A stretch of DNA of 64,000 nucleotides, from assembly GCF_003918875.1 (NCBI RefSeq), contig NW_025767460.1:186001-250000 (forward strand), given 5' to 3'. Numbering within the stretch: position 1 is the stretch's first letter; every line of letters starts with the position of its first letter. Position numbers and translations under genes: made by a program. Below the pieces are notes generated by a model. That model was given only the letters and a program-made list of their open reading frames with translations. It did not search any database and had not been told where the DNA came from. Positions 4,280-59,974 of this stretch are shown here, piece after piece. This DNA is from Haliotis rubra (Eukaryota).

Positions 4280-4782
4280 ATGAAATCGAGTGGCCTGTTC
4301 CTGGGCCTCATTGTGGCCTGCTTGTGTTGGACAGTTTTCGCTGCAAAAGAACCCAAGAAAAACGGGAAGGTGTAAATGTATGCAGAGATTTCTCAAAGAT
4401 GTGGACAAAATGATTGACAGAAAAATGCAAAAATTGGAAGAAAAATATTTCCGTTCTGCGATCAGTAACAAAGACAACTCCAGTTCCATATCAAAACAGA
4501 ACAGGCGATGGTTGAAACTCAACGAAGATGTTCACTTTACCAAGGAGGCGTTGCAAACGCTGAGCCGGAACCTCCAGTTCGTTACAGACCAGGTGAACTC
4601 GCAGAGCCAGGACACGGAGTCTCTGAACGAGCACTTTAACCAGCTGAACGGGTATGTGGCCAACCTGACAGGCGTGGTGGATCGACTTGAGAAGATGATG
4701 CTGACCAGAGGCAGTATGGAGATGACCACGTCCTCCACAAGTCTCCACGAGTCACCATCGCCTGAGCCGTCGTACCCGAGAC
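4280..4782 (+). CDS. Alternative N-terminal exon A of a fibrinogen-related (FReD) secreted protein: signal peptide + CxC + coiled coil + Ser/Thr/Pro linker; contains a +1 frameshift as assembled
   Basis: ATG at 4280 reads MKSSGLFLGLIVACLCWTVFAAKEPKK (basic n-region, hydrophobic core, A-A cleavage region) and stops at TAA 4373. Removing one base at or near the A5 run 4358-4362 joins it to the frame ...GRCKCMQRFLKDVDKMIDRKMQKLEEKY...LNGYVANLTGVVDRLEKM...SPEPSYPR. It ends TAC CCG AGA C|GTGAGT, a strong phase-1 donor at 4783. An upstream acceptor ATTTCAG| lies at 4098. Confidence 0.8.
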
Positions 4783-5708
4783 GTGAGTATATGCAGTTTA
4801 CTATAGATAACACACATGTATGAGTTCTGTCTTATTTCTGGAGATATAATCACTGCCACTCGCTCATAATATGAGAGTAAAGAAAAGATTTATATCGACT
4901 CCAAAATATTGCTTAAACATATGTCTTAAGCGGAACCTCGCCAGGAGATATGCCTTCAGGTTTTGTTATTTAGGGCTGGTAGAGACGTGGGTCTTAGTTG
5001 AAGCTTAGTTAATGGAGACCAATGTCTAACCGAGGGTCTGTTGAGAACCCAGCGTCAGTCTTAGGTAAGGGTCTATTAGGGATGCCAGTGCCGGTCTTGA
5101 CTGAGGTGATGTGAGCGGAATACGGTCTGAGCCCACCTGTGACGGTCAAGGTTGTTGGCCCGTGTGCAAACTCACCGAAAGAAAACTGTCCCACTCCTCT
5201 AAAACCCGTCCGTTTTCTTTACCCATTACCTGTGCCAATTGGCATGAACACGATAATCTCTCCCAGAACCTCATAACCAAACATTCCGTAAAAACTCGGC
5301 AACACGGTCAGTCATTTCTTAAGAAATCCGCGTTTTTCGACTTTTACAAATATTTGAAATTTTCTCGTGTCCACACTGCAACTAGTTCGGAGGGAATTCT
5401 TCGATGGTGTTAAATGTTGATCTCCACATGGTATTTGTTGTCAAAACGTCATATTTCCGGGGGAAAGTGGCCGAATCTAAATAAAGGCCAGATTACCCCA
5501 GTTTGGCTGTTGTTTGGGCCGAATCATTGACTTAGCATGTCCGCGTCTGGAGAGAGAAGGTTTGTACAGAAATGGGTATCGGATGTAGTGCCATCTTGCA
5601 TAATGCCAGCTGGTGTCTGTCTGTGTAGTGTAAACTAAGAGAAGAATTGTTGGTCCATCAGTAGGGTCGCTGTTGTACGTCCATCAGGGCGTGTTGGAAA
5701 CCGACGAC

Positions 5709-5970
5709 AACCTGTAACATATCGGTTGTCGTGTCAGTCGTGTATATAACCTGTAACATATCGGGTGCTGTCAGTCGTGTATATAACCTGTAACATATCG
5801 GGCGCTGTCAGTCGTGTACGTAACCTGTAACATATCGGGCGCTGTCAGTCATGTACATAACCTGTAACATATCGGGTGCTGTCAGTCGTGTATATAACCT
5901 GTAACATATCGGGCGCTGTCAGTCATGTATATAACCTGTAACACGTCGGGTACTTAGTTATCGGGCGCTG
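5709..5970. repeat. Minisatellite, 37-bp unit TAACCTGTAACATATCGGGCGCTGTCAGTCGTGTATA
   Basis: About 7 tandem units. Confidence 0.95.
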
Positions 5971-6109
5971 TGACGTCAGTGCGAGATCCTTTTATCTATA
6001 TCAGCCTTGGTGAGACTTGTGCACAGACTGCCAATTAAATTCACTTCATTGATAGCAAGCAAATGAAGCCCGTGAAATTCCGGTTTAAAATTTGGCAACC
6101 AACGAACTA

Positions 6110-6245
6110 AGGTGGTCAGGCTCGCTGACTAGGCTGGTGCATGTCATCGTGTCTCTAATTCGATGCTCATGATATCAGTCACCGCATTGTCTGGTCCAGA
6201 CAGGGATGGTTACATATTCATCTTGCTAAGTGGGGCTTAAAAGCC
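6110..6245 (+). mobile_element. Degenerate copy of the second SINE-like family
   Basis: TCGATGCTCATGATATCAGTCACCGCATTGTCTGGTCCAGAC matches the reverse complement of 57546-57590. Confidence 0.55.
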
Positions 6246-6960
6246 GCTTCATTTCTCACATGTAAGGTGTCAGTAAACAAGGGTTTATCAAACGTTTATC
6301 GAGGGTCATAATCAGGGCGAATTTGGGATCAATGTTTGACTTTAACCTACTACAGCGCTATTGACCTTTTGTACATTGTAAATAGCTATGATGAACAGAA
6401 TCCCTACGTGACTTGTTAACACCGTATGAATGCCATCACCCGCATGAGAGACGTGTCCTTCTTTCCGTTCATAGTTTGTTAATTTCACGAGAAAGGTCTC
6501 TGTACAAAAGCAATGTATGTTAATCAAAGTGGTGAGATAAGTGTCTGTACCACCAGGGGGAATGTAGTACGTTAAATCTCACGTTCCTGAGGTTTAACCG
6601 TGCACTCATGCACCGCGAGTCTGACCTACATTGTAGATTACGTCATTTCCGGGGCAGGGAAGAGAGGAAGCATGGTGAATGGGAATGATGCCGTGCAGCA
6701 GGAAGAGCTGGAATGGTGGTACTGACACGGGCGCCACCCGGATACCAGGATGTCAGTCGGGACAAGTGGGCATCCACAACGAGATCCGGGTTGGTGGGCA
6801 GACTGGTGATTGCAACTAACTTCACTTTTGTTTCCAAGTTAATTAAGGTTTGCAATCATCCACGAAATGTACACGCGCAAGTTGCTACCTACAATGTCAC
6901 TTCAACCGCATAATGATTTCAGGATATTCCTCCAGCTCCCTGGCGGAATCAGGCCTGCTT

Positions 6961-7475
6961 GTGTTATGTGTAGAAGGTGGTATACATGTTGTGTGTGATG
7001 TGTAGAAGGTGGTATACATGTTGTGTGTGATCTGTAGAAGGTGGTATACATGTTGTGTGTGATGTGTAGAAGGTGGTATACATATTGTGTGTGATGTGTA
7101 GAAGGTGGTATACATGTTGTGTGTGATGTGTAGAAGGTGGTATACATGTTGTGTGTGATGTGTGGAAGGTGGTATACATGTTGTGTGTGATGTGTAGAAG
7201 GTGGTATACATGTGTGTGATGTGTAGAAGGTGGTATACATGTTGTGTGTGATGTGTAGAAGGTGGTATACATGTTGTGTGTGATGTGTTGAAGGTGGTAT
7301 ACATGTTGTGTGTGATGTGTGGAAGGTGGTATACATGTTGTGTGTGATGTGTAGAAGGTGGTATACATGTTGTGTGTGATGTGTAGAAGGTGGTATACAT
7401 GTGTGTGATGTGTAGAAGGTGGTATACATGTTGTGTGTGATGTGTAGAAGGTGGTATACATGTGTGTGATGTGTA
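6961..7475. repeat. Minisatellite, 32-bp unit GTGTAGAAGGTGGTATACATGTTGTGTGTGAT
   Basis: About 16 tandem units. Confidence 0.97.
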
Positions 7476-10130: not shown

Positions 10131-10640
10131 TACCCTATAGACATAACAAAGTTATGCCATGGAGTGTTTAGTTGTGGTAATTTTGTTTTTTGTTACAACA
10201 CTTACACCATCGTGACCTACATGGGGTCAGGTATCCTCCCCTGCTATCAGTCCATCTAAGCACGGTCGCCTAAATGGGACGCAATGTTTCAAGTTCATCG
10301 TGACCTTAATGACGCTGGACGTTAACCCCACCCCACGTCATCAACGACTTCATCAGTGTCCAACAACAGCAGCGCCGTAATCTGAACTAGCAATTTTCTC
10401 CACGCTGCTGTTTGCAGATGGTATTACTACGCACACAAAAGCAAGGTCTCGGGCTGTGATCAATGTGCGTTAATTATTAAATATTCATTGTTGTACTAGC
10501 ATGTATAGAGTTAATGTCGAGTATTATGTTACCATCTCCTACAAGAGTTATCAGGAAACGACCCCCACAAATGACAAGGGGACTTTAGTTCTGCTGGTCA
10601 CACAGTCACTGGAGTTTCGTTCTTTGCGCACCAGGCTATA

Positions 10641-11097
10641 ATGATGACGGGTGTAGTGTGCGTCCTTGCGGCAGTATTGTCTGCTGGTCAACTTGCAGCA
10701 CACAGTGGACACTTTCGGACGTTCAAAAATGAAGTAGACATTCTCAGGTCAGACTTCCGTTCTGAGGCGGACTTATTACGACAGGAGATGAAAAATGTAA
10801 CCACCCAATTGGCAAAGGATATGTTACAATATAAAATGTCTCGGAGACAGAAGAGTTCTAGGGGGTTAAATAACAAGATTATAGATGGCTGGCTGATTTA
10901 CCTGGTGAGATTTGCGTCCAGTGTGGACAAGAGGATTACTTCGCTAGGGACGGCTAGAGAGTTACGCGATGATAAAATCGAAACATGGATGGGCGAAATT
11001 GAAGAAAGGCTTGAGAAACTGGAGAACATTACAAAACGACGACATCGTAGTAAGAAAAGGAACAGGACAGAATCGGTGAAGAAAGACATTCCTAGAG
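10641..11097 (+). CDS. Alternative N-terminal exon B of the FReD protein: signal peptide + coiled coil + polybasic linker
   Basis: Intact ORF MMTGVVCVLAAVLSAGQLAAHS...IETWMGEIEERLEKLENITKRRHRSKKRNRTESVKKDIPR. It ends ATT CCT AGA G|GTATCA (phase 1). G+AC from the next exon gives the canonical FReD start IPRDC. A pyrimidine-rich acceptor TTCGTTCTTTGCGCACCAG| lies at 10634. Confidence 0.85.
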
Positions 11098-15958: not shown

Positions 15959-18900
15959 AATTGCCGTGGGAACGCATTGTCGTTGTCAGCTTGGTTTCAA
16001 AGATATGTTGATGATGACGAGACGCTAAAGTTACCCCTGATACAAGTTAAACAAGAGACGATGACAAGATTACCGTGTCTGTGGCTATCGAGGCCGTACA
16101 TTCGTAACATCCTTGTGGTCTTGTATAATGATAGATACGGCCTTTTGAGAAGCCGCTAGCTTACGATAGGTGACAGTTCCTCCAGAACACAGCAGCACAG
16201 AGTGGGTGAGTGAGGTCCGGGACTCGCTACACTGACACCCAGGCGTTCTGTCGAACTCGTCAGTATATTTTGCGTATCTTTACTCGAACAAGACCTTTGG
16301 CGCAGCGTGAGTATACACTCGAACCATAGCGAGCTGTAATGACACATAGTGAAATAAGTTCTACATATGGTGTAAACATTGAAGCATCAGATACGCGCAC
16401 ACTCAAAGGCGTCACACGCGGCGCGCACCGGTCTACACGCCGACTCCCCTGGCGGGAACATTCTGATTGTGTTGGATGACGGCCAAGGGAAACAACTCTA
16501 ACTTGCTGAAAGCAGATCACGACCTTGGTAAACTCGTCGATGTTTTCCGACAATCAAAATACTGGTATTTGTTGCGGTAAGGTGTGCGGGGTGGAATTGG
16601 TTAATAAGGAATTATGTGTTTTTTAACAACAACACCAAGAATCTCTAAATTTTAAGCAGGTGTAAAAATATTTGTTGATGTGTCGTCAGATCTCGTCAGC
16701 CTGAAGGAGTTGGCGATAGTACAAACATGTGGTAAATTCGAGGCACAGCTTTCACTGCTAAGTAGATACACATAGTTTTGATGAATATTGTTGCTGGTAA
16801 CGGCTTCAATATTGTGACGGAGCAGAATACTGTTTTGTCTTTTCTTTGGTCCTTGAAGGCCTGGCTGCCTAACGCCTCCGGTAGCCATTTGTTTTATTTG
16901 GATATGTCCTGGCCCCTGAGCTCAAACGTTTCGCGAGCACCCGTGGTCTATTTTCACTGTTGCGTTTTCTTGTTATGGAAACATTTCCCATGGGCACACA
17001 ACGGTCAGTATCGGTTTAATCCTGGATTATGACGGCTGGATTACAGCAGTGTCAATGGGCATTTCTTGGTCTTATTCGGCAGAATATCAAAGCCTTTTCA
17101 GTAGATGGTTGGGAGTCGTTAAACAAGGTGGAGTTCAAATAACGTCAAATAGCCGCTGAGTATTAGTGATATTAAGTGATTAAATGTATCGACGATGGAA
17201 ACAATGGATAATTCAGCTTTGTCATCGGACTGAGTATCCCAGTGATGGTTACACCTGTACATGGGAACGCCATGCATTCCTCTCTGTTCTCCATCTCAAG
17301 ACATACATACCAGTTGCTTGCATTAGCAGTTGAACAGCGCAGTACCTGTACATTTGAACTCTGTCGTCGCTGCTAATATTTCCCATGGAATTCGGTTTGT
17401 CTGTGTTTCTAGTTAAATGGACCGATATTTCAATACCGATTGTGCGCATGTTTAGGATTGGTTGAACAGAAATAATTAGTTGTTGAAAGTAGCAAATTGT
17501 GATTACATCATTACCGGTGTGATACCGCTTACTGGAGATGAGAGTCAAGCGAAGTTACCACTCATCAATCATTTTGTGTAAGATTAAACCCCTCTCGTCA
17601 GAATCATCAACTGCGGTCTGTTCTCCTGACAAGTGTTCAACTGATCATATCGTGTAATCGGCGGTAAAAATACTATTAAAGATAGTCTCAGATGTAATAG
17701 TTATCGCTGAAATCATGCGATACATTTGAAACAGTTGCAACTCTCATTTATCATAGATCTCGAGGACTGAGTGAGCAATTCTAGGAAAGCACACTGTCTA
17801 AATAAAAACCGCTCACCTCCCCCACCGCCAACCCTCGTGAATTAGCACCTAGTGTGCTGAAGTCGGACTGCCTCACCCTGGTGCGCACCTGCCGTTGTGA
17901 GGTCGTGTAACCCCCAGAGAGCTTACCTCGCCCGTGAGGGAGAAATACATTATTATCATTAGCTTGCAGAAATCGTACATAACTGCAAGTGAAATATTAT
18001 GCAACTGTAGCTGCGAGTTGTGCACCCATACATAATCATTACGTCTGCAGGATTTACTTTAAAGCACATGTTACAGGAGCGATGTAAACCAGTAGCATCT
18101 TCCCAAGCTCTTGCAGCTGACGTCGTACATGGTGTATATGTGTATTCCAGTTTAAAGGTATTTGAGTTAGTAATCGCCAACATGGAAACAAATAGAAGCA
18201 TGTTACGAGCGTGAAAGAGGCATGTAAGACATGAAGTGGTTATATCTCTGGTGACTACGCATGTTGATACGACACCCTCCCCTCTATCGTCCAGGGTAAT
18301 CTACAGGAGGCATACCGATAGACGGGCCACGTTATCCACGGTTTATCCCATATACATCTGAGGAGTGTTTTCCTACTCAATCTACTGCGAGCCTACTCCA
18401 GCCATTCCGGCTGTCATGTCCACTTGACCAGTGTTATATAGTGACCCTCTTATCTCCTGACCTGTGCAGTAAACACGTACTATCTACACGCCTGCACCGG
18501 TCTTTGTCCACCCCGCATTTGATCTTCAAAACCACCCGTCGCCTTCGGTCAGCAGTTCGATGACCAGAGTTGCGTCCCCTGGGTGTTAAAGCTCCTTATG
18601 ATCTTGAATTCAAGTCGATGACATGGTCCTTGGTTTCTCAGCACCACACCTAGCTTATTCGTTTCTACACATTTTCAAACGTTTAAAGAGTAGCATTACA
18701 ACAGAGTGACTGATTCCCCCGGTACTGGGAAGTTGTACACCGCTGATACCAGACTGGGTGTTGGATCTGATTCATCTGACGTTAGTGTTGCAGGCTCTTT
18801 CACGGCTTTAAGGTGCACGAGTTGTAACACAATAGTTGGCAAAGCTCTGTTTGTGTGACATTCGGAGTTACCGAAGGTCATGTTCATATATTTTGGCCGT

Positions 18901-21594: not shown

Positions 21595-22051
21595 CTAGGG
21601 AACGATGACATGGACGTTTAGGAACGTGTTGATAAGGGTCAAGAAGACGGGGTTGAGAAACCGCGCCAGGATAAGGCCTCAGTCTACATGGATCTTTAGA
21701 ACCTGGGGACCATCTGTAGACGGAAGATTTGTGTATCAGCCCTTTGCTGCTGTTAGTATAGTCCCCCTGCCGATATTGTTGCCCTTTGCTAAAGGTCATC
21801 TAATCTTTGTTTTGATTGGCTACGACACCTTAATGGCATCGTTGACCTTTGATCTTTTACTGATGTCGCAATGGTCTATTATGCGTACACTTTTTCAAAA
21901 GTTGATTGAAGTTTTCGTGTTAAAACGATTCAAACAAATTAAAGCAAAGCCAGTGAACGGATTCGATAAGAATATTTTGTTATGGGAATATTTGACGGAA
22001 GGAGGATACATAATTACAACCTAGTTTGTTCCTGCACTCAACGAGGTCCAC

Positions 22052-23993: not shown

Positions 23994-24834
23994 CGCTGGA
24001 CCCTGCAACACTGTACTCCGGACTGAGATGTATCGTACGCCACGATGTACCAACGCGTAACTCTGCAAGTGGGGTATCCAGTGCGGAGTATCTGTCTCCA
24101 GACACATCAAGGAATAATGCACAGGGGCGGACTGATGCTGGTTGCGGTGACCATGTGGTAGTTCCTCAATGTTGTGCTGGACGGTGTCCAGGTGTGTTGG
24201 GCCAGCTTCCCAGCCTCCACCAGGAGTGGAGAGGGGAGCATGGCGAGGCCAGGCAGCAGTTAGCTGGCCTTCTTACCTTCGCGGAATGTCAATATTCTAT
24301 TGTGAAAATAAATATTCCTTCGCGGCCCAGTTAAACAAACACATTTCTCTGCCATGATGAAGCCGAGTCTAAAGGGCAACGGACATGCGCAGAAAATAAT
24401 ATTTCCCATGATCCCGCTAAAATGTTTACAGAACAATAAATATGACAAACTGAGATTGCTGTTTGGGATCCCACAGGTGCCCACTGGTCAGAATATGACC
24501 TTGGTTCATATGCTAGTAGTTTAACTCTGGCCGACAAGGTCGACTCAGGTATTTCCGCTAAGTAGCTTCACCCTGTGACCAATTACACGTATGCAGTCAC
24601 AGAAAGTGAGCTAAAAACACTTGAATCAAGAAGTGAAGAGGGTTTGTTTCTTTTCGTATAGCATGCGGGGTAAATCCGCTAACACTCCTTACGTCAAACC
24701 ACAGACGCTACACACCGTGCATGTGCGTGCCTAACAAGGAGAGGTTCGACGCAATATAAGAGGGCTTGTGTTCAGTGGGCGGCCAACTGGACAACCGTCA
24801 GATTTTGATCTGCAGAAAGCTACGGAGAGAGAGA

Positions 24835-27800
24835 GAGAGGTGTACCCTATACCCCCGTCAGTTGGGGACCTACAGAGCCTGAACTGTGTCCTGTACCCCC
24901 GTCAGATGGGGACCTACAGAGAGAGGTGTGTCCTGTAACACCGTCAGTTGGGGACCTACAGAGCCTGAACTGTGTCCTGTACCCCTGTCAAATGGGGACC
25001 TACAGAGAGAGGTGAACCCTGTACCCCTGTCAGATGGGGACATACAGAGAGAGGTGTGCCCTGTACCCCCGTCAGATGGGGACCTACAGAGAGAGCTGTG
25101 CCCTGTACCCCCGTCAGATGGGGACCTACAGAGAGAGCTGTTCCCTGTACCCCCGTCAGATGGGGACCTACAGAGAGAGGTGTGCCCTGTAACCCCGTCA
25201 GATGGGGACCAAGAGAGAGAGCTGTGCCCTGTACTCCCGTCAGATGGGGACCTACAGAGAGAGCTGTGCCCTGTACCCCCGTCAGATGGGGACCAAGAGA
25301 GAGAGCTGTGCCCTGTACTCCCGTCAGATAGGGACCTACAGAGAGAGGTGTGCCCTGTAACCCCGTCAGATGGGGACCAAGAGAGAGAGCTGTGCCCTGT
25401 ACTCCCGTCAGATGGGGACCTACAGAGAGAGGTGTGCCCTGTACCCCCGTCAGATGGGGACCTACAGAGAGAGCTGTGCCCTGTACCCCCGTCAGATGGG
25501 GACCTACAGAGAGAGAGGTGTGCCCCTGTAACCCCCGTCAGATGGGGACCTACAGAGAGAGCTGTGCCCTGTACCCCCGTCAGATGGGGACCTACAGAGA
25601 GAGCTGTGCCCTGTACCCCCGTCAGCTGGGGACCTACAGAGAGAGCTGTGCCCTGTACCCCCGTCAGATGGGGACCTACAGAGAGAGCTGTGCCCTGTAA
25701 CCTCGTCAGATGGGGACCTACAGAGAGAGCTGTGCCATGTAACCCTGTCAGATGGGGACCTACAGAGAGAGAGGTGTGCCCTGTACCCCCTGTCAGCTGG
25801 GGACCTACAGAGAGAGGTGTGCCCTGTACCCACGTCAGATGGGGACCAAGAGAGAGCTGTGCCCTGTACCCCCGTCAGATGGGGACCACAGAGAGGGTGT
25901 GCCCTGTAGACCTACAGAGAGAGCTGTGCCCTGTACCCCGTCAGATGGGGACCTACAGAGAGAGCTGTGCCCTGTAACCCGTGTCAGATGGGGACCTACA
26001 GAGATGCTGTGCCCTGTGCCCCCGTCAGATGGGGACTTTACCTGTGCCCTGTAAACCCTGTCAGATGGGGACCTACAGAGAAGATGGGGAACCCCGTCAG
26101 ATGGGGACCACAGAGAGCTGTGCCCTGTAACCCCGTCAGATGGGGACCAACAGAGAGAGCTGTGCCCTGTAACCCCGTCAGATGGGGACCCTGAGAGACC
26201 CTGTACTCCCCGTCAGATGGGGACCTACAGAGAGAGCTGTGCCCTGTAACCCTGTCAGATGGGGACCTACAGAGAGAGAGCTGTGCCCTGTGACCCTGTC
26301 AGATGGGGACCTACAGAGAGAGCTGTGCCCTGTAACCCCGTCAGATGGGGACCAAGAGAGAGCTGTGCCCTGTACCCCCCGTCAGATGGGGGACTTACAG
26401 AGAGAGCTGTGCCCTGTAACCCCGTCAGATGGGGACCACAGAGAGAGCTGTGCCCTGTACCCCCGTCAGATGGGGACCTACAGAGAGCTGTGCCCTGTAA
26501 CCCCGTCAGATGGGGACCAAGAGAGAGAGCTGTGCCCTGTACCCCCGTCAGATGGGGACCTACAGAGAGAGCTGTGCCCTGTAACCCCGTCAGATGGGGA
26601 CCTACAGAGAGCTGTGCCCTGTACCCCCGTCAGATGGGGACCTACAGAGAGAGCTGTGCCCTGTAACCCCGTCAGATGGGGACCTACAGAGAGAGAGCTG
26701 TGCCCTGTACCCCCGTCAGATGGGGACCTACAGAGAGAGGTGTGCCCTGTAACCCCCGTCAGATCGGGGACCAAGAGAGCTTTGCCCTGTACCCCCGTCA
26801 GATGGGGACCTACAGAGAGAGGTGTGCCCTGTACCCCCGTCAGCTGGGGACCTACAGAGAGAGCTGTGCCCTGTACCCCCGTCAGATGGGGACCTACAGA
26901 GAGAGCTGTGCCCTGTACCCCCTGTCAGATGGGGACCTACAGAGAGAGGTGTGCCCTGTAACCCCGTCAGATGGGGACCTACAGAGAGAGCTGTGCCCTG
27001 TACTCCCGTCAGATAGGGACCTACAGAGAGAGCTGTGTCCTGTAACCCCGTCAGATGGGGACCTACAGAGAGAGGTGTGCCCTGTAACCCCGTCAGATGG
27101 GGACCTAGAGAGAGAGCTGTGCCCTGTACTCCCGTCAGATAGGGACCTACAGAGAGAGCTGTGCCCTGTACCCTCGTCAGATGGGGACTTACAGAGAGAG
27201 CTGTGCCCTGTACCCCCGTCAGCTGGGGACCTACAGAGAGAGCTGTGCCCTGTAACCCCGTCAGATGGGGACCAACAGAGAGAGCTGTGCCCTGTAACCC
27301 CGTCAGATGGGGACCTACAGAGAGAGCTGTGCCCTGTAACCCTGTCAGATGGGGACCTACAGAGAGAGCTGTGCCCTGTACCCCGTCAGATGGGGACCTA
27401 CAGAGAGAGCTGTGCCCTGTAACCCCGTCAGATGGGGACCTACAGAGAGAGCTGTGCCCTGTAACCCCGTCAGATGGGGACCAAGAGAGAGAGGTGTGCC
27501 CTGTACTCCCGTCAGCTGGGGACCTACAGAGAGAGCTGTGTCCTGTACTCCCGTCAGATGGGGACCAAGAGAGAGGTGTGCCCTGTAACCCCTTCAGATC
27601 GGGACCTACAGAGAGAGCTGTTCCCTGTAACCCCGTCAGATGGGGACCAAGAGAGAGAGCTGTGCCCTGTACTCCCGTCAGCTGGGGACCTACAGAGAGA
27701 GGTGTGCCCTGTAACCCCGTCAGATGGGGACCTACAGAGAGAGCTGTGTCCTGTACTCCCGTCAGATGGGGACCAAGAGAGAGGTGTGCCCTGTAACCCC

Positions 27801-28105
27801 TTCAGATGGGGACCTACAGAGAGAGCTGTGTCCTGTACCCCTGTCAGATGGGGACCTACAGAGAGAGCTGTGCCCTGTACCCCGTCAGCTGGGGACCTAC
27901 AGAGAGAGCTGTGCCCTGTACTCCCGTCAGCTGGGGACCTACTGAGAGAGGTGTGCCCTGTCAACCCCGTCAGAGAGGGAGACTGTGCCCTGTAACCCCG
28001 TCAGATGGGGACCTACAGAGAGAGAGGTGTGCCCTGTACTCCCGTCAGCTGGGGACCTACAGAGAGAGCTGTGCCCTGTAACCCCGTCAGATGGGGACCT
28101 ACAGA
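24835..28105. repeat. Minisatellite, 42-bp unit GTGCCCTGTACCCCCGTCAGATGGGGACCTACAGAGAGAGCT
   Basis: About 78 tandem units. Confidence 0.97.
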
Positions 28106-28749
28106 AGAGTGGCCTTGTGTGTATTATCATGACAAATAAGGTCCTCATCGGCAACCATCCACAGACTACAAAGTACATTAACTCGACAGATAGCATTCAT
28201 GACATAATTAACTCCAAGTTATAACCGATGACCACTCGATTCCTTCAATAAAATCAGAGATCTAATAGTAACAAAACATTGTCTGAAGAGGTTTACAGTT
28301 ACCAGTACACCGAACAGATCAAACACTGGCTGGAGAAAAGAGAGTGTTTGACGCACGAGAAAAACTCCTCTCTTTAAAGTTAATTGTAGACCAGGGCAGC
28401 CGTTTGTTCACTTCCCAAGGGAAATAAAAACACTATCGTTGAGCCGAGCGGCTTAAAATCTATTCTCGCCCAAGAGACACAGAAAGTTATCGTTTACGCT
28501 CTAATTGATATCCACAACATATTGTAGTAGTCGTTTCTTGTATTGCGAGACGTCGGTGCATATGGAAATGTCGCTTGCACTGGGGCAGGTCTCTCCAGTG
28601 TGTTTAGGAGCTGCATATCCAACCATTGTGTCATAACTGGACACCTACTTGTCGCTATGACATGCAGTTCTCAAGCTTTGGCGTTGCATGTTTTGTACGC
28701 GCTCATATACATGTATAATGAGTCGATTAAAGGTTTGTGTAAAATGCCT

Positions 28750-32958: not shown

Positions 32959-33656
32959 GAAGACCTGTGTAATTAATTACTGTAGGCGTACACGTCTTGT
33001 CTACACACACACCCCTCTCACACCCTCCTCCAGAGAACCGTGTTTACCGACTTAGCAAGGGGCACACACACACAATTATCATCGCTTTGTTAAAAGTTCG
33101 CAGTTTCTGCAGTTATTATTATAATATTCTACAAATAATCAACGACCAAGATCCTTCATGTTCGGTGGAAAGCACAAAAGCTGGGGCATTGGAGTCAGCG
33201 CGTTGATGTTTTGATGATATTAACCATGCCATGTGTTTATGTTGCGTCCAAATTCCCCGACTCGCCCTTGCCCGAAGGGAATCTATTGAATTACTTTCCT
33301 TTTGATGTCATATAGGCAAGATTTTCATTTGATGCATCGTCCATGATGCAACTTTGGTGATTGTAGGCTTTTAAAACAGCTACTGTTACCTATCCAAATA
33401 TAACCGTCGGTCTTGGAGATCCACTCATTTGACCAGGTCGTGCTGGGGAACTCCTTCCTATATTAATGGGAAAGATCTAAGAACATTTTATAGATGAGTT
33501 GATTTAAGTCCAAAAGCTGAAATGTTGGTAACCGAACATAAAGTGTTGAAAAGACGACGTAGTGTTAATCATTGACGCGGCTGTGATGGTGTCTGGGCGA
33601 CATCGGCAACCGTCTCTAGTTCAGCCGTATCTGCGTACTTGTGGTGCTTATTAACA

Positions 33657-34312: not shown

Positions 34313-34374
34313 TAAAAAATATATCTTGGCTATCCCGTGTAGGTAAAGTTGATCAAACTGATCGATGTTCTCTT

Positions 34375-36854: not shown

Positions 36855-39800
36855 CGGTGGGGTGTGTGGTCTAACTGTAGATGGGGTGAACCACTCACGA
36901 CATGGTCTAAGTGTAGATGGGGGGAACCACTCACGACATGGTCTAAGTGTAGATGAGGTGAGCCACTCACGACATTGCCTAACTGTAGATGAGGTGAGCC
37001 ACTCACGACATGGTCTAAGTGTAGATGGGGTGAGCCACTCACGACATGGTCTAAGTGTAGATGGGGTGAACCACTCACGACATGGTCTAAGTGTAGATGG
37101 GGTGAGCCACTCACGACATTGCCTAACTGTAGATGAGGTGAGCCACTCACGACATGGTCTAACTGTAGATGGGGTGAGCCACTCACGACATGGTCTAAGT
37201 GTAGATGAGGTGAACCACTCACGACATGGTCTAAGTGTAGATGGGGTGAGCCACTCACGACATGGCCTAACTGTAGATGAGGTGAGCCACTCACGACATG
37301 GTCTAAGTGTAGATGGGGTGAGCCACTCACAACATGGTCTAAGTGTAGATGGGGTGAGCCACTCACGACATGGTCTAAGTGTAGATGGGGTGAACCACTC
37401 ACGACATGGTCTAAGTGTAGATGAGGTGAGCCACTCACGACATTGCCTAACTGTAGATGAGGTGAGCCACTCACGACATGGTCTAACTGTAGATGGGGTG
37501 AGCCACTCACGACATGGTCTAAGTGTAGATGAGGTGAACCACTCACGACATGGTCTAAGTGTAGATGGGGTGAGCCACTCACGACATGGCCTAACTGTAG
37601 ATGAGGTGAGCCACTCACGACATGGTCTAAGTGTAGATGGGGTGAACCACTCACGACATGGTCTAAGTGTAGATGAGGTGAACCACTCACGACATGGTCT
37701 AAGTGTAGATGGGGTGAGCCACTCACAACATGGTCTAAGTGTAGATGGGGTGAGCCACTCACGACATGGTCTAAGTGTAGATGAGGTGAACCACTCACGA
37801 CATGGTCTAAGTGTAGATGGGGTGAGCCACTCACGACATGGCCTAACTGTAGATGAGGTGAACCACTCACGACATGGTCTAAGTGTAGATGGGGTGAGCC
37901 ACTCACGACATGGTCTAAGTGTAGATGGGGTGAACCACTCACGACATGGTCTAAGTGTAGATGGGGTGAGCCACTCACGACATGGCCTAACTGTAGATGA
38001 GGTGAACCACTCACGACATGGTCTAACTGTAGATGGGGTGAGCCACTCACGACATGGTCTAAGTGTAGATGAGGTGAACCACTCACGACATGGTCTAAGT
38101 ATAGATGGGGTGAATCACTCACGACATGGCCTAAGTGTAGATGTAGATGGGGGAACCACTCACGACATGGTCTAAGTGTAGATGGGGGAACCACTCACGA
38201 CATGGTCTAAGTGTAGATGGGGGAACCACTCACGACATGGTCTAAGTGTAGATGGGGTGAACCACTCACGACATGGTCTAAGTGTAGATGGGGGAACCAC
38301 TCACGACATGGTCTAAGTGTAGATGGGGGGAACCACTCACGACATGGTCTAAGTGTAGATGGGGGAACCACTCACGACATGGTCTAAGTGTAGATGGGGG
38401 GAACCACTCACGACATGGTCTAAGTGTAGATGGGGTGAACCACTCACGACATGGTCTAAGTGTAGATGGGGGGAACCACTCACGACATGGTCTAAGTGTA
38501 GATGATGGGGAACCACTCACGACATGGTCTAAGTGTAGATGGGGTGAACCACTCACGACATGGTCTAAGTGTAGATGGGGTGAGCCACTCACGACATGGC
38601 CTAACTGTAGATGAGGTGAACCACTCACGACATGGTCTAAGTGTAGATGGGGTGAACCACTCACGACATGGTCTAAGTGTAGATGGGGTGAACCACTCAC
38701 GACATGGTCTAAGTGTAGATGGGGGGAACCACTCACGACATGGTCTAAGTGTAGATGGGGTGAGCCACTCACGACATGGTCTAACTGTAGATGGGGTGAA
38801 CCACTCACGACATGGTCTAAGTGTAGATGGGGTGAGCCACTCACGACATGGTCTAAGTGTAGATGAGGTGAACCACTCACGACATGGTCTAAGTGTAGAT
38901 GGGGTGAGCCACTCACGACATGGTCTAAGTGTAGATGGGGTGAACCACTCACGACATGGTCTAAGTGTAGATGGGGTGAACCACTCACGACATGGTCTAA
39001 GTGTAGATGAGGTGAACCACTCACGACATGGTCTAAGTGTAGATGAGGTGAACCACTCACGACATGGTCTAAATGTAGATGGGGTGAGCCACTCACGACA
39101 TGGCCTAACTGTAGATGGGGTGAACCACTCACGACATGGTCTAAGTGTAGATGGGGGGAACCACTCACGACATGGTCTAAGTGTAGATGGGGGGAACCAC
39201 TCACGACATGGACTAAGTGTAGATGGGACATGGGAACCACTCACCTCACGACATGGTCTAAGTGTAGATGGGTGAACCACTCACGACATGGTCTAAGTGT
39301 AGATGGGGTGAACCACTCACGACATGGTCTAAGTGTAGATGGGGTGAACCACTCACGACATGGTCTAAGTGTAGATGGGGTGAACCACTCACGACATGGT
39401 CTAAGTGTAGATGGGGTGAACCACTCACGACATGGTCTAAGTGTAGATGAGGTGAACCACTCACGACATGGTCTAAGTGTAGATGGGGTGAACCACTCAC
39501 GACATGGTCTAAGTGTAGATGGGGTGAACCACTCACGACATGGTCTAAGTGTAGATGGGGTGAATCACTCACGACATGGTCTAAGTGTAGATGGGGTGAA
39601 CCACTCTTTGACATTGTCTAAGTGTAGATGGGGTGAACCACTCACGACATTGTCTAAGTGTAGATGGGGTGAACCACTCACGACATTGTCTAAGTGTAGA
39701 TGGGGTGAATCACTCACGACATGGTCTAAGTGTAGATGGGGTGAACCACTCACGACATTGTCTAAGTGTAGATGGGGTGAATCACTCACGACATGGTCTA

Positions 39801-40220
39801 AGTGTAGATGGGGTGAACCACTCACGACATTGTCTAAGTGTAGATGGGGTGAATCACTCACGACATGGTCTAAGTGTAGATGGGGTGAATCACTCACGAC
39901 ATTGTCTTACTGGGTATGGGGTGAATCACTCACGACATGGTCTAACTGGTGTGAGCCACTCCCAACATGGTCTAACTGGGTACGGATTGAACCACCCACG
40001 ACATGGTCTAACTGTAGATGGGGTGAACCACTCACGACATGGTCTAACTGTAGATGAGGTGAGCCACTCACGACATGGTCTAACTGGGTATGGGGTGAAC
40101 CACTCACGACGTGGGATAACTGGGTATGGGGCGAACCACTCACGACATGTTCTAACTGGGTATGGGGTGAACCAATCACGACATGTTCTAACTGGGTATG
40201 GGTTGAACCACTCACGACAT
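36855..40220. repeat. Minisatellite, 36-bp unit CATGGTCTAAGTGTAGATGGGGTGAACCACTCACGA
   Basis: About 93 units. Confidence 0.97.
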
Positions 40221-40221
40221 G

Positions 40222-46346: not shown

Positions 46347-47553
46347 TAGTATGACCAGAAATATTTGAGAATTTTAGGAATATGTTTTATTGGATTTCTA
46401 GTATAAACAACCTTGACCAGCCATCAAGTGCTTTATTCATTCAAGAGAGACAACTCCGTTAATCCTTTTTCATTAGTTTGTGAAGAGTTATCCCCCTTTG
46501 TTTACTTGCTGGCAGACGACATTTTCAGTGATCCTCAGTATGGATGATTTAGAGAAGAGGAAGTTGATTTTAGAGTATTATAACAAGGATATCAGATCAG
46601 CTAAAGTGATTTCAAGTAGAACAGGCATCCCTTTGTCCACTGTTTATCGTGTTTTGGAAAATATTGCAAATGGATATGGCATTGAGCACCAGGGAGGCGC
46701 AGGTAGGCCCAGAAAATTGACTGTTGGTGACAGGAGGCGGATTGGTATTCTTGTTTCTAAAAACAAACGAAGGACTGGATAGGTTTGATAAAGGAGCTGT
46801 GGCTGTCTGTAAGGAGACAATTTGAACTGAGCTGCATGCAATGTGTTGGCAGAAAAGTCGAGGAATTCCATCACCGATCATGAAACCTGAACAAAAGGAG
46901 CGAAGGTTGAACTGGTGCTTACAGGATAGAAATTTTAACTGGGACAAAAACCTTTGTATCAGCGCCCAAAGTACAGTTCGAAATTGAACGTGTGGGGTGG
47001 CATATCTGTGTTAGGGCAACGCCCCTCTGTGTATTTGAAGGGAATATGAACAGTGAGCGGTACACAGATATTCTCGAGGGACATTTACTTCCATCTGCTC
47101 ACGTGTTCTATGGAAAGTTTTGGATTTTTCAGCAGGACAACGACCCAAAACATCTTTCAAAGCATTCACAGGCCTGGTTTTGGTCCAAAAATATGACATT
47201 ATTAGATTGGCCAAGCTATAGCCCTGAACTAAATCCAATAGAAAATGTTTGGGGACTTATGAAGGAAAGTGTCAATAAGAAAAATCTGACAAATATTGCT
47301 GAAATGAAAGAAGAGGTGGTCCGATATTCGGACAGCAGGGATCGCGACTTTCTAACTTCTTTGATCAGTAGTATGCTCCGCCGCATTGAAGCCTGCATTG
47401 CTGCCCATGGTGACTTGACAAAATACTAACTGTTCACCTGTCTTTGAATCTGGAGTTATGTTCTACTAATATTCACATTTAATACGTGAGTAATGAGTGC
47501 AAAAATAAAAGAAATTACAATCTTTAAATTCTCAATAATTTCTGGTTGTACTG
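46347..47553 (+). mobile_element. Tc1/mariner-superfamily DNA transposon (Tc1, DD34E), decayed
   Basis: Imperfect TIRs of about 30 bp: TAGTATGACCAGAAATATTTGAGAATTTTA versus the reverse complement of TTTAAATTCTCAATAATTTCTGGTTGTACTG. The left end abuts a TA run; the right flank reads TT. Transposase remnants lie inside. Confidence 0.93.
46540..47429 (+). pseudogene. Tc1-like transposase pseudogene
   Basis: N-terminal HTH (IPLSTVYRVL) with GRPRKLT, then RLNWC, VWGGIS, and FQQDNDPKH...WPSYSPELNPIENVW with 34 residues between D and E. It has a stop at 46780, frameshifts, and a deletion of the first catalytic-Asp segment. Confidence 0.93.
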
Positions 47554-49518: not shown

Positions 49519-50320
49519 AGCCTTCATACCCACGGTGTCAAACAAACAATAAAACAACCTGGTTTGCGTTTTTCAATCCCCTAACGAAATGGTATTGTAA
49601 ATGAGACAAATGCTTGATGTCGACGGTGATTACACACTGGAGTTGCTTTCACCTAACGTGTATTATAAGTATAACTACTAGCCATCGATGTATGGCTAAA
49701 CAAAACTTATGTGGACTGTAGTCTTTAAATAACACAAGGGAATGATGGGGCACAATATAGAGAATGGTTAGTTTGGCAGCCAAGCTTCCGCTCTTATGGG
49801 CACGGGGCACACGTCAGTATCATTTCCCGCAATTATTGTATGACCTTTTATTGGTGTTCATTATGGCATTGACCGGCATACGGGTGGTCAGTCTGGCACA
49901 TGTGTGGACAATGGACAAACAAGCCCGTGTTTAATAGCAGCTGTTTGCACGTATTCATTTCACCACCCTCTTCACCACGGTTTGATCTTGGTTGACGAGG
50001 AGTCGCGGGCGCACGTTAACACTCCCAAGTGCAATACAAGACTCGTCTGTGAACGTGGGTAATTGTCCAGAATTTATGGTCAAGGATCATTTGAAGATGT
50101 CCGCTTTATGGCGTTGTGTCCATAAACCTCTCCTCAACTCCGGACAGTTACAAGGCAAAATGGCAATGAATATATATTTTGTAATGACACGGGCATGAAA
50201 CTAAACTTAAAGAAGTCTTAATTTATACTCTTTGTAGCAATGATGACCCGTACTTATGAAAACTGGTTAGAATGAAACTGCATCCTTCTATAGATGACTG
50301 GGACTCTTCCTCCTGAATCC

Positions 50321-55706: not shown

Positions 55707-55896
55707 ATCCACTAGTAGCAGTGTGCCACTCACACGACCTAGCCTTGTACCGCTCACATTCACTGGGACTGTCGCCTGGAACAACATTGAATAATGTATA
55801 TGATATTGATGCGATGTAGTTCTATTGGTTTATTTTAAAATGTAATTGACGAAACCCGACTAATTCTGTGAATTAATTATGTTTGATTGAAAAACA

Positions 55897-56927: not shown

Positions 56928-57069
56928 ATGAACCATCCCCATTTGGCAGCAGCTGTCAGTCTGTCTGCGATGTTTCTCCTGACACAGTATCAAGACGCTG
57001 TTCATTATCTGATTAAACGGCGGACATTCTTGAAAGAGCATGTTCCTTTCAAGCGAGCTATGCTGAATG
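56928..57069 (+). CDS. Possible short third N-terminal exon (C) for the FReD gene
   Basis: Acceptor CTCCCTGTTTGTATGTAG| at 56917, ATG at 56928, MNHPHLAAAVSLSAMFLLTQYQDA... (weakly signal-like), and phase-1 donor AAT G|GTATCG. It lacks the PR ending and any coiled coil, so support is weak. Confidence 0.2.
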
Positions 57070-57298
57070 GTATCGTGGTGCGGCTGTGTCCTATCACAAC
57101 ATCTCGTTACTGGGAAGTTCCACCACACTGGCTGCCGGTCTACGTTATCTAATATATGTTGTATACTTCTGGGCTTTTCAAAAATACATCGCAAACATGA
57201 TCTTAAACCAGCGAGGAATGTGAGCGATCGAGTCGCAAAACAGTGAAGGGGAGGTAACTCTTGTAAAGAGTGCTGATACAGGGTTCCGTGAAAGATTT

Positions 57299-57600
57299 GC
57301 TTGGTTGGCTTATTCAACGTAGTCTGTCTCACAGTCCCTGAACCACATTAATTCCCCTACTGCCAAGCCCTCTCTGGTGCTCTAAAGCAAGTCTAGATTT
57401 CCTCAGAGATTCCCTGCTCCTTTTCAATATAAATGGGCTTGTTTGTTACTATCAAAATTATATATATTCAGAGACTAAGCATTAGTCTATATTCAACGCT
57501 GCACTCAGCAATATTCCAGCTATATGGCGGCGGTCTTGACATAATCGAGTCTGGAGCAGACAATCCAGTGATCAACAGCATAAGCATCGACCTACGCAAT
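57299..57600 (-). mobile_element. SINE-like repeat (second family), interrupted by the TAG..CTA element
   Basis: The reverse strand reads ..GATGCTTATGCTGTTGATCACTGGATTGTCTG..CCGCCGCCATATAGCTGGAATATTGCTGAGTGCAGCGTTGAA, sharing the 3' core with the 34103 SINE. Related forward fragments lie near 6110-6245 and 8010-8060. Confidence 0.65.
57320..57489 (+). mobile_element. Non-autonomous DNA element with TAG..CTA termini and 9-bp TSD (Academ/AcademH-like)
   Basis: Starts TAGTCTG and ends TAGTCTA. TATTCAACG is duplicated at 57311-57319 and 57490-57498. It is homologous to 23804-23993. Confidence 0.75.
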
Positions 57601-58014
57601 GTTCTGTAAAAGAGGCGCAGAGTGATAGCTGTTGTTGTTGAGTTAGATGCTTTGGAGGACGCCTTCGCCGGTTGGCATGTCGGCAGACCTATATGTGATA
57701 GCTTTGTGCACTGGTTTTAGTAGCTGTAGGATATGTATTTCACTATTTATGAGTACTTCACTATACAAAAGCACGTAGTTGATGACAGCTCATCTTTAAT
57801 TGGTGACCGAATGAAGATGATATCCGTTGGCGCGCAAGCGTGAGGATGTCGTATATGAAGTATTCCAAGAAACCTGCTTAAACTTAAACTAAAAATTAAA
57901 TTGTTGTAAAGATAAATGTGTACGGTGTCGAGTTGACAGTGCATCACGTGTAATGCTTATCGAAATGAGACTTATTTGACTATCCGTATGAAACTTTAGT
58001 GCGCATGCTTACTA

Positions 58015-58220
58015 ATCGTAGTACATGTTGGTGTGTTGGTACGGAACAGGTCGACTTGTAGTAGATGTAGTGTTGCTGGGGAACACGTCGACTTGTCGGA
58101 GTAGATGTTGGTGTGTTGGTAAGGAACAGGTCGACTTGTCATAGTAAATGTTGGTGTTGCTAGGGAAAACGTCGAGTTGTAGATGTTGTTGTGTTGGTAG
58201 CGAACATGTGGACTTGCCGT
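58015..58220. repeat. Old degenerate tandem repeat (~40 bp) just upstream of FReD exon 1
   Basis: GTAGATGTTGGTGTGTTGGTA..GAACA.GTCGACTT recurs about 5 times. Confidence 0.7.
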
Positions 58221-58281
58221 GTTTTTAACGTGTATGGTGGGAGTGTAGCTGAATCTCATGGCTTCATAACGTTGGTTACAG

Positions 58282-58401
58282 ACTGTCACGAGGTATACCT
58301 GCAAGGAGGGCTCAAGTTTGAAGGGGACTACCAGATACTCATCAAGCCGGATGGAGCCCCTGCCCCTTTCAAGGCCGTCTGCAGGGTCTTCAACAACTGG
58401 G
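58282..58401 (+). CDS. FReD exon 1 (shared/constant), 120 bp, phase 1-1
   Basis: TTACAG|AC TGT CAC... translates (D/H)CHEVYLQGGLKFEGDYQILIKPDGAPAPFKAVCRVFNNW(G), matching the DC...GxY.I.P....F...C pattern of the fibrinogen C-terminal domain. Donor G|GTGAGT at 58402. Confidence 0.92.
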
Positions 58402-58824
58402 GTGAGTACAACGCCTTTGTCACTGTAAGCGCTCGTAAAATATATTGCGGTAGCAGCCTACACTGGTTAGCCTAGCGGAGGATCACAATTTGTATGCGGT
58501 GAGATGGGTGAAAATGTTAGACACTGGTTGTTTATTATAGGGTGTTGGGTCAGAAGGCATCGGGTGGGGAGGGTCCTATTTAGGGAGGGTAATTAAAAGA
58601 GGTCGTTTATAATGAAGCATAAAGTGCTCGGGAGGGTCATGATTTAAAATGTACAAATACCTGGGTGATGCTCATCCAAAATAAAACAAGGATAAGGACA
58701 GGAACATTATTTTCAGTTCATTAGATCCTTCCCCGTCCCTAACCCGTCCCTAACCCGACCCTAACCCGCCCCAGAATATATAGTTCCTCTCTAACCAGTC
58801 AACATAGAAAGGTCGTCCTGCAGC

Positions 58825-59745
58825 AGCCTGGTTGCCAGGTAATCACCCTGCTGAAGTAGCCTGGTTGCCAGGTTATCACCCTGCTGAAGTAGCTTGGTTG
58901 CCAGGTAATCACCCTGCTGAAGTAGCTTGTTTGCCAGGTAATCACCCTGCTGAAGTAGCTTGGTTGCCAGGTAATCACCCTGCTGAAGTAGCTTGGTTGC
59001 CAGGTAATCACCCTGCTGAAGTAGCTTGGTTGCCAGGTAATCACCCTGCTGAAGTAGCCTGGTTGCCAGGTAATCACCCTGCTGAAGTAGCCTGGTTGCC
59101 GGGTAATCACCCTGCTGAAGTAGCCTGGTTGCTGGGTAATCACCCTGCTGAAGTAGCTTGGTTGCCGGGTAATCACCCTACTAAGGAACTTGGTTGCCAG
59201 GTAATCACCCTGCTGAAGTAGCTTGGTTGCCAGGTAATCACCCTGCTGAAGTAGCCTGGTTGCCAGGTAATCACCCTGCTGAAGTAGCCTGGTTGCCAGG
59301 TAATCACCCTGCTGAAGTGGCTTGGTTGCCAGGTAATCACCCTGCTGAAGTAGCTTGGTTGCCAGGTCATCACCCTGCTGAAGTAGCTTGGTTGCCAGGT
59401 AATCACCCTGCTGAAGTAGCTTGGTTGCCAGGTAATCACCCTGCTGAAGTAGCTTGGTTGCCAGGTAATCACCCTGCTGAAGTAGCTTGGTTGCCAGGTA
59501 ATCACCCTGCTGAAGTAGCTTGGTTGCCAGGTAATCACCCTGCTGAAGTAGCCTGGTTGCCAGGTAATCACCCTGCTGAAGTAGCCTGGTTGCCAGGCAA
59601 TCAACCCTGCTGCAGTAGCCCGATTTCCGGGCAATCACCCTGCTGCAGTAGCCTGATTTCCGGGTAACTACCCTGCTGCAGTAGCCTGATTTCCGGGTAA
59701 CTACCTGCTGCAGTAGCCTGGTTGCCAGGTAACCACCCTGCTGAG
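58825..59745. repeat. Minisatellite, 33-bp unit CTGGTTGCCAGGTAATCACCCTGCTGAAGTAGC (intron between FReD exons)
   Basis: About 28 units. Confidence 0.97.
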
Positions 59746-59836
59746 TTATTTGACCTGTGTCAGTCTGGTGTTAAGCACACGTGTGCTCTCTTCATTCTTA
59801 TCGATGTGGTTGGTCATGGTGACGTGTGTGTTCCAG

Positions 59837-59974
59837 GGTGGACAGTGATCCAGCGGCGACAGGATGGGTCAGTGGACTTCTACCGGTCGTGGGCGGACTA
59901 CAAGGTCGGGTTTGGAGACAAACACAAGGAGTTTTGGCTCGGAAACGACAACCTGCATTATCTCACAACACAAG
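59837..59974 (+). CDS. FReD exon 2 (shared/constant), 138 bp, phase 1-1
   Basis: TTCCAG|GG TGG... gives [46 protein letters not shown](G), the hallmark fibrinogen/angiopoietin motif. Donor G|GTGTGT at 59975. Confidence 0.97.

What the first reader, a model, noticed from the sequence alone, without database searches (positions are those of the whole stretch)
4280..59974. Variable N-terminal exons feeding one shared fibrinogen domain (protocadherin/UGT1A-like layout in a FReD gene)
Seen in the sequence: exons A (4280-4782) and B (10641-11097) show no obvious similarity to each other, yet each has its own ATG, signal peptide and coiled coil. Both end in [Y/I]-P-R plus one base at a GT donor (phase 1). 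The only FReD exon 1 I can find (58282) has a phase-1 acceptor, giving YPR-H-CHEVY from A and IPR-D-CHEVY from B. Splicing A into B is out of frame and reaches a TGA within about 33 codons, so they cannot be consecutive exons. I saw no FReD-like exons between A and B or between B and 58282. Established: 'PRDC' opens the fibrinogen C-terminal domain, and the N-terminal coiled coil sets oligomerisation in angiopoietins, ANGPTLs and fibrinogen. Mollusc FReD lectins are known to diversify mainly by gene duplication, somatic variation or internal splicing. Inference: this locus swaps whole secretion/oligomerisation modules onto one constant recognition head, possibly allowing hetero-oligomers. More variable exons may lie upstream of the window.
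Basis: partly seen in the sequence, partly recalled or inferred. Interest (0 to 1): 0.9.

Follow-up and report, generated by a model that had tools for sequence, protein, structure and literature searches.

The report
Abalone FGL1-like gene, two N-termini
An abalone fibrinogen-like gene joins either of two unrelated signal-peptide/helical exons to the same fibrinogen domain; this is real, but it is ordinary two-way alternative 5' exon use already annotated in sister species, not a protocadherin-like exon cluster.

Summary
The window is Haliotis rubra DNA holding most of a conserved FGL1/angiopoietin-like gene.

RNA contigs show the junction 4782^58282 directly. The junction 11097^58282 is the RefSeq model of H. 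rubra itself. Three other Haliotis species carry RefSeq isoforms X1 (A-type, 400 aa) and X2 (B-type, 384 aa) with the same exon order.

Three corrections:
- In this assembly exon A is frameshifted: the signal peptide runs into a TAA at 4373. DNA and RNA contigs from four runs add one A and one G, so this is most likely an assembly error.
- Exon A is not a first exon. It has an acceptor at 3869/3870, and non-coding leader exon(s) lie upstream of the window.
- There are only two variable exons, and they are not paralogous.

A is the ancestral spiralian module (signal peptide, CxC, helices). B is a Haliotis-only orphan exon under purifying selection; it lacks CxC and has a polybasic linker. The FReD head is extremely conserved, so an immune-diversity reading is unlikely. 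Whether B has its own promoter is unresolved.

Ordinary, low novelty. In passing: a 205-nt element in the intron between B and the first FReD exon is identical in four species.

The parts
3870..4782 (+). Exon A (internal exon). 5' UTR 3870-4279; CDS from the ATG at 4280 to the phase-1 donor after 4782. Encodes signal peptide, basic patch, CxC, helical stalk, S/T/P linker and YPR. The assembly lacks one A after 4357 and one G after 4363.
   Evidence: RNA contigs cover 3867-4782 only, with loose ends on both sides and both inserted bases. Acceptor cacag|G read. Orthologue of RefSeq X1 N-termini.
10641..11097 (+). Exon B coding part (152 codons + 1 nt): signal peptide, helical stalk without CxC, polybasic KRRHRSKKR linker, IPR, phase-1 donor. 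The 5' end of the exon was not determined.
   Evidence: 100% identical to residues 1-152 of XP_046550106.1. Intact 152-codon ORF with dN/dS 0.19-0.29 in four Haliotis species. Its words are held by RNA-labelled runs.
58282..58401 (+). First constant (FReD) exon, phase 1 to phase 1. Shared acceptor for A and B.
   Evidence: tblastn of P0001. The loose end behind 4782 in RNA contigs equals 58282 onward. Pfam Fibrinogen_C starts at the PR|DC boundary.
59837..59974 (+). Second constant (FReD) exon, phase 1 to phase 1. The last coding exon (146 codons) lies beyond the window's 3' end.
   Evidence: tblastn of P0001. Exon map of the sister species. No exon found in 61100-62200.
10495..10600 (+). Approximate position of a conserved block 60-180 nt upstream of the B ATG. 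It is either B's core promoter and 5' UTR, or a 3' splice site region (contains a conserved TTATCAG|G). Unresolved.
   Evidence: Four-species alignment. The cag|g just before the ATG in H. rubra is not conserved.

Best explanation
This is one gene for a secreted FGL1/angiopoietin-like protein, a fibrinogen-related domain (FReD) on a helical N-terminal stalk. It makes two isoforms through two mutually exclusive 5' coding exons.

Exon A is the ancestral module and is conserved across Spiralia: signal peptide, basic patch, CxC, helices, S/T/P linker and [YF]P[RK][DH]C. Transcripts carrying it start at non-coding leader exon(s) upstream of the window, splice into A at 3870, and then go from 4782 to 58282.

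Exon B lies 5.9 kb downstream of A, inside a first intron that is large in every species examined. It is a Haliotis-specific orphan exon with its own ATG, signal peptide and helical stalk. It has no CxC pair and carries a polybasic linker, and it splices from 11097 to the same acceptor.

The most likely mechanism for B (inference, about 65%) is an internal alternative promoter just upstream of B. Under that model B needs no acceptor and is never joined to A.

Expected consequence (inference): the receptor- or ligand-binding head stays the same while covalent multimerisation and linker processing differ.

The frameshift of exon A in this assembly is an assembly error, not a pseudogene.
For: - Junction A^58282: three RNA-run contigs end their match at 4782 and continue with the first 30 letters of 58282 onward. 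Two of them are about 3.8-kb full-length contigs.
- Junction B^58282: P0001 = XP_046550106.1 (H. rubra) equals exon B plus the FReD exons of the window at 100%.
- RefSeq X1/X2 pairs exist in H. asinina, H. rufescens and H. cracherodii, with the same order A, B, FReD1-3 in their genomes.
- Both exons are constrained: dN/dS is 0.10-0.18 for A and 0.19-0.29 for B, and B keeps 152 codons in all four species.
- The A-type N-terminus, with invariant CxC, is found in gastropods, bivalves, Lingula and Owenia.
- B is found only in Haliotis among 1.84 billion representatives and is absent from the Gigantopelta and Patella loci.
- Frameshift: all four runs insert A after 4357 and G after 4363, matching H. 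cracherodii.
- In run X9 the A contig stops exactly 30 nt past the junction. That is the k=31 de Bruijn signature of a second path into the first FReD exon. The same run also holds B words. Suggestive only.
Against: - I did not see the B junction in reads myself. It rests on Gnomon models in four species and on B words in runs labelled RNA by guess.
- The only Logan contig encoding B is unspliced or genomic.
- B's own promoter is not shown. A conserved TTATCAG|G about 95 nt upstream of the ATG could be an acceptor, which would make B an internal exon fed by the same leader as A.
- The coiled-coil and oligomer-state differences are inferred. The AlphaFold2 models of both stalks are helical but low confidence (pLDDT about 45-60).
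- A private null allele in the assembled individual cannot be formally excluded, because the run laid as DNA differs from the window by 1.7%.
Confidence: 0.8

Rival explanations
1. A and B are mutually exclusive internal exons under one promoter. Transcripts start at the shared non-coding leader upstream of the window and splice into either A or B. This would be alternative splicing, not alternative promoters.
For: A is shown to be an internal exon behind a leader. A block containing a possible acceptor, TTATCAG|G, with a pyrimidine-rich run is almost invariant in four species 60-180 nt upstream of the B ATG.
Against: - If B had a working acceptor, A's donor would be expected to use it, giving an out-of-frame product (a TGA after about 31 codons, by my reading).
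- A and B are not homologous, unlike typical mutually exclusive exon pairs.
- Each exon carries its own ATG and signal peptide.
- Alternative promoters are the commoner cause of such layouts (general knowledge).
Confidence: 0.3
2. Exon B is not a productive coding exon. It is an annotation artefact or a rare, non-functional transcript, and only the A isoform matters.
For: I did not see the B junction in reads. The two full-length RNA contigs of organism A carry only A. The only Logan contig with B is unspliced. B has no relatives outside Haliotis.
Against: - B keeps an intact 152-codon ORF with a conserved ATG, donor and phase in four species, at dS up to 0.37 and dN/dS 0.19-0.29.
- Gnomon built the B isoform independently in four genomes.
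- B words are present in many RNA-labelled runs of two organisms.
Confidence: 0.07
3. A and B belong to separate or collapsed tandem paralogous genes, each with its own FReD exons.
For: None found beyond the prior that mollusc FReD genes are often tandemly duplicated.
Against: There are no further FReD exons in the window on either strand. Four independent assemblies give the same single set of FReD exons behind A and B. An RNA contig joins A directly to 58282.
Confidence: 0.02

Closest known systems
RefSeq isoforms X1 ('fibrinogen-like protein A', 400 aa) and X2 ('fibrinogen-like protein 1', 384 aa) of H. asinina, H. rufescens and H. cracherodii, plus XP_046550106.1 of H. rubra
   Same: The same gene and the same two N-terminal exons on the same three FReD exons, in the same genomic order.
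   Different: H. rubra has no A-type model among the proteins found. Exon A is frameshifted in its assembly, which may be the reason. I found no paper discussing the isoform pair.
Vertebrate FGL1, angiopoietins and ANGPTLs
   Same: Signal peptide, N-terminal Cys and helical stalk, then a C-terminal FReD. The best solved matches are ANGPTL2, angiopoietin-1, ficolin-1/2 and FGL1. From established knowledge, the stalk sets multimerisation, and ANGPTL3/4 are cut by proprotein convertases in a basic linker.
   Different: Orthology to any one vertebrate member was not tested. Swapping the entire stalk by an alternative 5' coding exon is not, to my knowledge, the usual route in those genes. Cleavage of the B linker is untested.
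Clustered variable-first-exon loci (protocadherin alpha/gamma, UGT1A)
   Same: Alternative 5' coding exons, each with its own ATG and signal peptide, join one common acceptor of the constant exons.
   Different: Only two exons, and they are not paralogous. A is not promoter-proximal (it sits behind a spliced leader). No evidence of stochastic or combinatorial choice.
Mollusc immune FREPs / diversified FReD lectins (Biomphalaria)
   Same: Secreted mollusc protein with a C-terminal FReD.
   Different: No IgSF domains. One locus per species examined, with strong purifying selection on the head. No sign of diversification.

Membership tests
Fibrinogen-related domain proteins (Pfam PF00147 Fibrinogen_C) | Full-length match to the Fibrinogen_C profile above the gathering score | tested here: met
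   P0001 scores 228.8 bits and P0005 223.8 bits (cut-off 22), covering profile positions 1-220 of 221. The window itself holds only the first 87 residues of the domain.
Spiralian FGL1-like orthologue group (A-type) | Signal peptide, CxC, helical stalk, [YF]P[RK][DH]C boundary, FReD; four coding exons with a very long first intron | tested here: met
   CxC and the boundary motif are present in most relatives examined, and CxC is invariant in the 20-sequence alignment. The same four-exon map is seen in Haliotis, Gigantopelta and Patella.
Clustered variable-first-exon locus (Pcdh/UGT1A type) | An array of several tandem variable exons | tested here: not met
   Only A and B in the window. No further A/B-like exon in the sister-species loci, including 10 kb upstream of A. 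RefSeq lists only X1 and X2. A third, unrelated exon farther upstream cannot be excluded.
Clustered variable-first-exon locus (Pcdh/UGT1A type) | Each variable exon is a true first exon with its own promoter | tested here: not met
   Exon A has an acceptor at 3869/3870 and a spliced non-coding leader.
Clustered variable-first-exon locus (Pcdh/UGT1A type) | All variable exons splice to the same first constant exon | tested here: met
   A is shown by RNA contigs. B is shown by RefSeq models in four species.
Clustered variable-first-exon locus (Pcdh/UGT1A type) | Variable exons are paralogues from tandem duplication | tested here: not met
   BLASTP E 1.8. hhalign probability 0.9%.
Mollusc FREPs (IgSF + FReD immune lectins) | One or two N-terminal IgSF domains, and a diversified multigene family | tested here: not met
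   No IgSF domain in Pfam. One locus was found for each of the six species examined, and dN/dS of the head is 0-0.03.
Mutually exclusive internal exons | Both alternatives are flanked by the same upstream and downstream exons | tested here: inconclusive
   The downstream exon is shared. The upstream leader is shown only for A. A possible conserved acceptor lies upstream of B.

The most novel reading that the evidence does not exclude
Exon B arose de novo (or by capture of unrecognisable sequence) inside the long first intron in the abalone lineage. It became a selected alternative 5' coding exon with its own promoter. It replaces the ancestral disulfide-knotted CxC stalk, which is conserved from annelids to molluscs, with a Cys-free stalk that convertases can cut. 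The result would be a monomeric, dimeric or shed form of the same highly conserved FReD ligand that modulates or antagonises the multimeric A form, in the manner of angiopoietin-2 versus angiopoietin-1 or of cleaved ANGPTL4.
Probability: 0.15. Interest if true: 0.5.

Novelty: new member of a known kind. Interest (0 to 1): 0.25.

Why it matters
As it stands, this is routine alternative 5' exon use that NCBI's pipeline has already modelled in four abalone genomes. It does not reveal a new way of diversifying lectins.

Three modest points of value remain:
- It flags a two-base homopolymer error in the H. rubra assembly that breaks the ancestral isoform and may explain why no A-type model was found for that species.
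- It gives a clean case of a lineage-specific orphan exon, under purifying selection, that replaces an N-terminal oligomerisation module conserved across Spiralia. That is useful for studying how new coding first exons arise and how stalk architecture tunes FReD ligands.
- The extreme conservation of the head, together with a cluster of invariant non-coding elements in the intron, suggests a tightly regulated signalling ligand rather than an immune lectin.

Tried and rejected
- **Hidden FReD exons:** tblastn of the full 384-aa protein at E up to 100 on both strands found only 58282 and 59837.
- **More A/B-like exons:** tblastn with five A-type N-termini and a pattern scan for ORF + P-[RK] + 1 nt + GT found none.
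- **A-B homology:** BLASTP and hhalign of a 20-sequence A profile against four B sequences found none.
- **A 16-nt 'intron' (4367-4382) to restore the exon A frame:** rejected as too short. The reads show two missing homopolymer bases instead.
- **Leader exon of A in the window:** not found with up to 3 mismatches. One leader, from organism B, matches H. cracherodii about 6.1 kb upstream of exon A.
- **Spliced Logan mRNA for B, to read its 5' end:** the only hit (P0125, contig L006) reads through the donor into the intron, so it is genomic or unspliced.
- **Conserved intron blocks as further coding exons:** the 148-codon ORF at 21602-22045 is broken in H. cracherodii and H. rufescens. There is no usable ORF at 24186-24543.
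- **Rfam:** nothing over the whole window, and only a sub-threshold mir-456 match near the ultraconserved element.
- **AlphaFold2 of both isoforms:** helical stalks but low confidence, so no fold search was run.
- **Earlier notes of this scan:** nothing at this place.
- **Literature:** no paper on these isoforms.
Full report
**What is in the sequence**

Exon A has an ATG at 4280 and a GT donor after 4782. Exon B has an ATG at 10641 and a donor after 11097. Both donors are phase 1 behind ..YPR and ..IPR. The first FReD exon begins at 58282 behind ttacag, and the second is 59837-59974.

The signal peptide in frame 1 runs into a TAA at 4373-4375, while the helical part that ends in YPR is in frame 2. 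The window is rich in minisatellites. It contains no further FReD exon; 61100-62200 is empty and 62150-64000 is satellite.

**Identity of the gene**

I searched exon B against 1.84 billion representative proteins. Apart from one low-complexity repeat protein, the only hit was a 384-aa protein whose first 152 residues equal exon B. Its continuation equals the two FReD exons of the window at 100%. It is XP_046550106.1, 'LOW QUALITY PROTEIN: fibrinogen-like protein 1' of Haliotis rubra. So the window is H. rubra, and the junction 11097^58282 is the existing RefSeq model.

I then searched with the FReD part alone. H. rufescens, H. cracherodii and H. asinina each carry an isoform X2 (B-type, 384 aa) and an isoform X1 (400 aa). 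The X1 N-terminus is the orthologue of exon A.

I mapped these proteins onto the fetched loci. All three species show the same order: A, then B 5.8-7.8 kb downstream, then three FReD exons 26-35 kb further on. The window lacks only the last coding exon. Four independent assemblies with one set of FReD exons exclude collapsed paralogues.

**Reads**

I laid contigs of four public runs on 3750-5700.

- **Frameshift.** Two RNA runs and a DNA-like run of organism A, and an RNA run of organism B, all insert an A after 4357 and a G after 4363. These are the two homopolymer bases the window lacks relative to H. cracherodii. The frameshift is therefore almost certainly an assembly error. That fits the 'LOW QUALITY' flag on the H. 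rubra model, and it may explain why no H. rubra A-type model turned up.
- **Junction A^58282.** The RNA contigs match 3867-4782 only. Behind 4782 they continue with 30 letters identical to 58282 onward (one mismatch in organism B). The junction is thus seen directly in RNA, in two cases on contigs of about 3.8 kb.
- **Leader.** Before 3867 the RNA contigs carry 130-359 letters that are not in the window. The DNA-like contig runs straight through this point. The window has a strong polypyrimidine tract and cacag|G at 3869/3870. Exon A is therefore an internal exon fed by non-coding leader exon(s) upstream of the window. The organism-B leader matches H. cracherodii about 6.1 kb upstream of its exon A.
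- **A second path in X9.** In run X9 the exon A contig stops exactly 30 nt beyond the junction. For 31-mer assembly graphs, that is the signature of a second path entering the first FReD exon. X9 also holds exon B words. This is suggestive, not proof.

**Evolution of the two exons**

The A-type N-terminus has a signal peptide, a basic patch, an invariant CxC, helices, an NLT site, a linker and [YF]P[RK][DH]C. It is shared by gastropods, bivalves, Lingula and the annelid Owenia. A is therefore the ancestral exon 1 of a conserved spiralian gene.

Gigantopelta and Patella have the same four-exon gene with a 49-62 kb first intron but no B-like exon. B has no relative outside Haliotis. A and B are not detectably homologous.

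Both exons are under purifying selection in four Haliotis species. dN/dS is 0.10-0.18 for A and 0.19-0.29 for B, and B keeps 152 codons throughout. The FReD exons are at 0-0.03. The head is 78% identical to Gigantopelta and 63% to Lingula. This is a conserved ligand-type FReD protein, closest in sequence to the solved ANGPTL2, angiopoietin-1, ficolin and FGL1 domains. It is not a diversifying FREP, and it has no IgSF domain.

Mature B has no conserved cysteine. It carries a conserved KRRHRSKKR stretch in front of IPR. A has CxC and an S/T/P linker. AlphaFold2 predicts helices for both stalks, but at low confidence. Different covalent multimerisation and linker processing are therefore plausible but remain inferred.

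**How B is transcribed**

This is open. The cag|g just before the ATG in H. rubra is not conserved. A block 60-180 nt upstream is almost invariant and contains TTATCAG|G. It could be a core promoter with 5' UTR, or an acceptor region.

I favour an own promoter at about 65%. With a working acceptor on B, A's donor would be expected to splice into it and give an out-of-frame product. The two exons are also unrelated, and each has its own ATG. Also, the only Logan contig encoding B is unspliced.

**Comparison with known systems**

The shared-acceptor logic resembles UGT1A and protocadherin clusters, but the defining features fail:
- there are two exons, not an array;
- the exons are not paralogous;
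- A is not a first exon.

It is best described as ordinary two-way alternative 5' coding exon use, already modelled by RefSeq in the genus. I found no paper on it.

**Verdict**

Interest is low.

**Seen in passing**

A 205-nt stretch in the intron between B and the first FReD exon (24249-24453) is identical in all four Haliotis species, although the coding exons differ by 4-12%. It has no conserved ORF, no Rfam match and no notable RNA fold. Several shorter invariant blocks lie nearby.

Noticed in passing
window 24249-24453: A 205-nt stretch in the intron between exon B and the first FReD exon is 100% identical in H. rubra, H. asinina, H. cracherodii and H. rufescens, although the gene's coding exons differ by 4-12% (dS 0.12-0.8). 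It is single copy and absent from the Gigantopelta and Patella loci. It has no conserved ORF, no Rfam hit and RNA fold z-scores of -1.4 and -0.7. Probably a cis-regulatory ultraconserved element.
   Followed up: partly
window 2689-2729, 4035-4091, 16482-16536, 21710-21837, 28330-28392, 33097-33145, 50056-50094: Further runs of 39-63 nt are invariant in all four Haliotis species. One lies in the 5' UTR of exon A (4035-4091, containing upstream ATGs). The rest lie upstream of exon A or in the intron between exon B and the first FReD exon. Such a cluster of conserved non-coding elements is more typical of tightly regulated genes.
   Followed up: partly
window 4353-4366: Two adjacent single-base homopolymer deletions in the assembly (A5 for A6, G3 for G4) break exon A. 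All four runs laid carry the longer forms.
   Followed up: yes
L001 53562-56733 (-), L002 44139-47138 (-), L003 59581-63204 (-), L004 73436-75084 (-), L005 77569-78891 (-); beyond the window's 3' end: A nested minus-strand gene (309-336 aa, no Pfam family) sits in the last intron of the FGL1-like gene in Haliotis, Gigantopelta and Patella. This nesting is conserved across gastropods.
   Followed up: no
window 46477-47426 (+): Remnant of a Tc1/mariner-type transposase (HTH plus DDE_3, E 2.8e-14), split over two frames, in the intron between exon B and the first FReD exon.
   Followed up: partly
whole window: More than 25 minisatellite arrays (periods 17-57 nt, up to 3.4 kb) fill the introns. 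Examples are 36867-40221, 24832-28109, and 58818-59744 between the two FReD exons.
   Followed up: no
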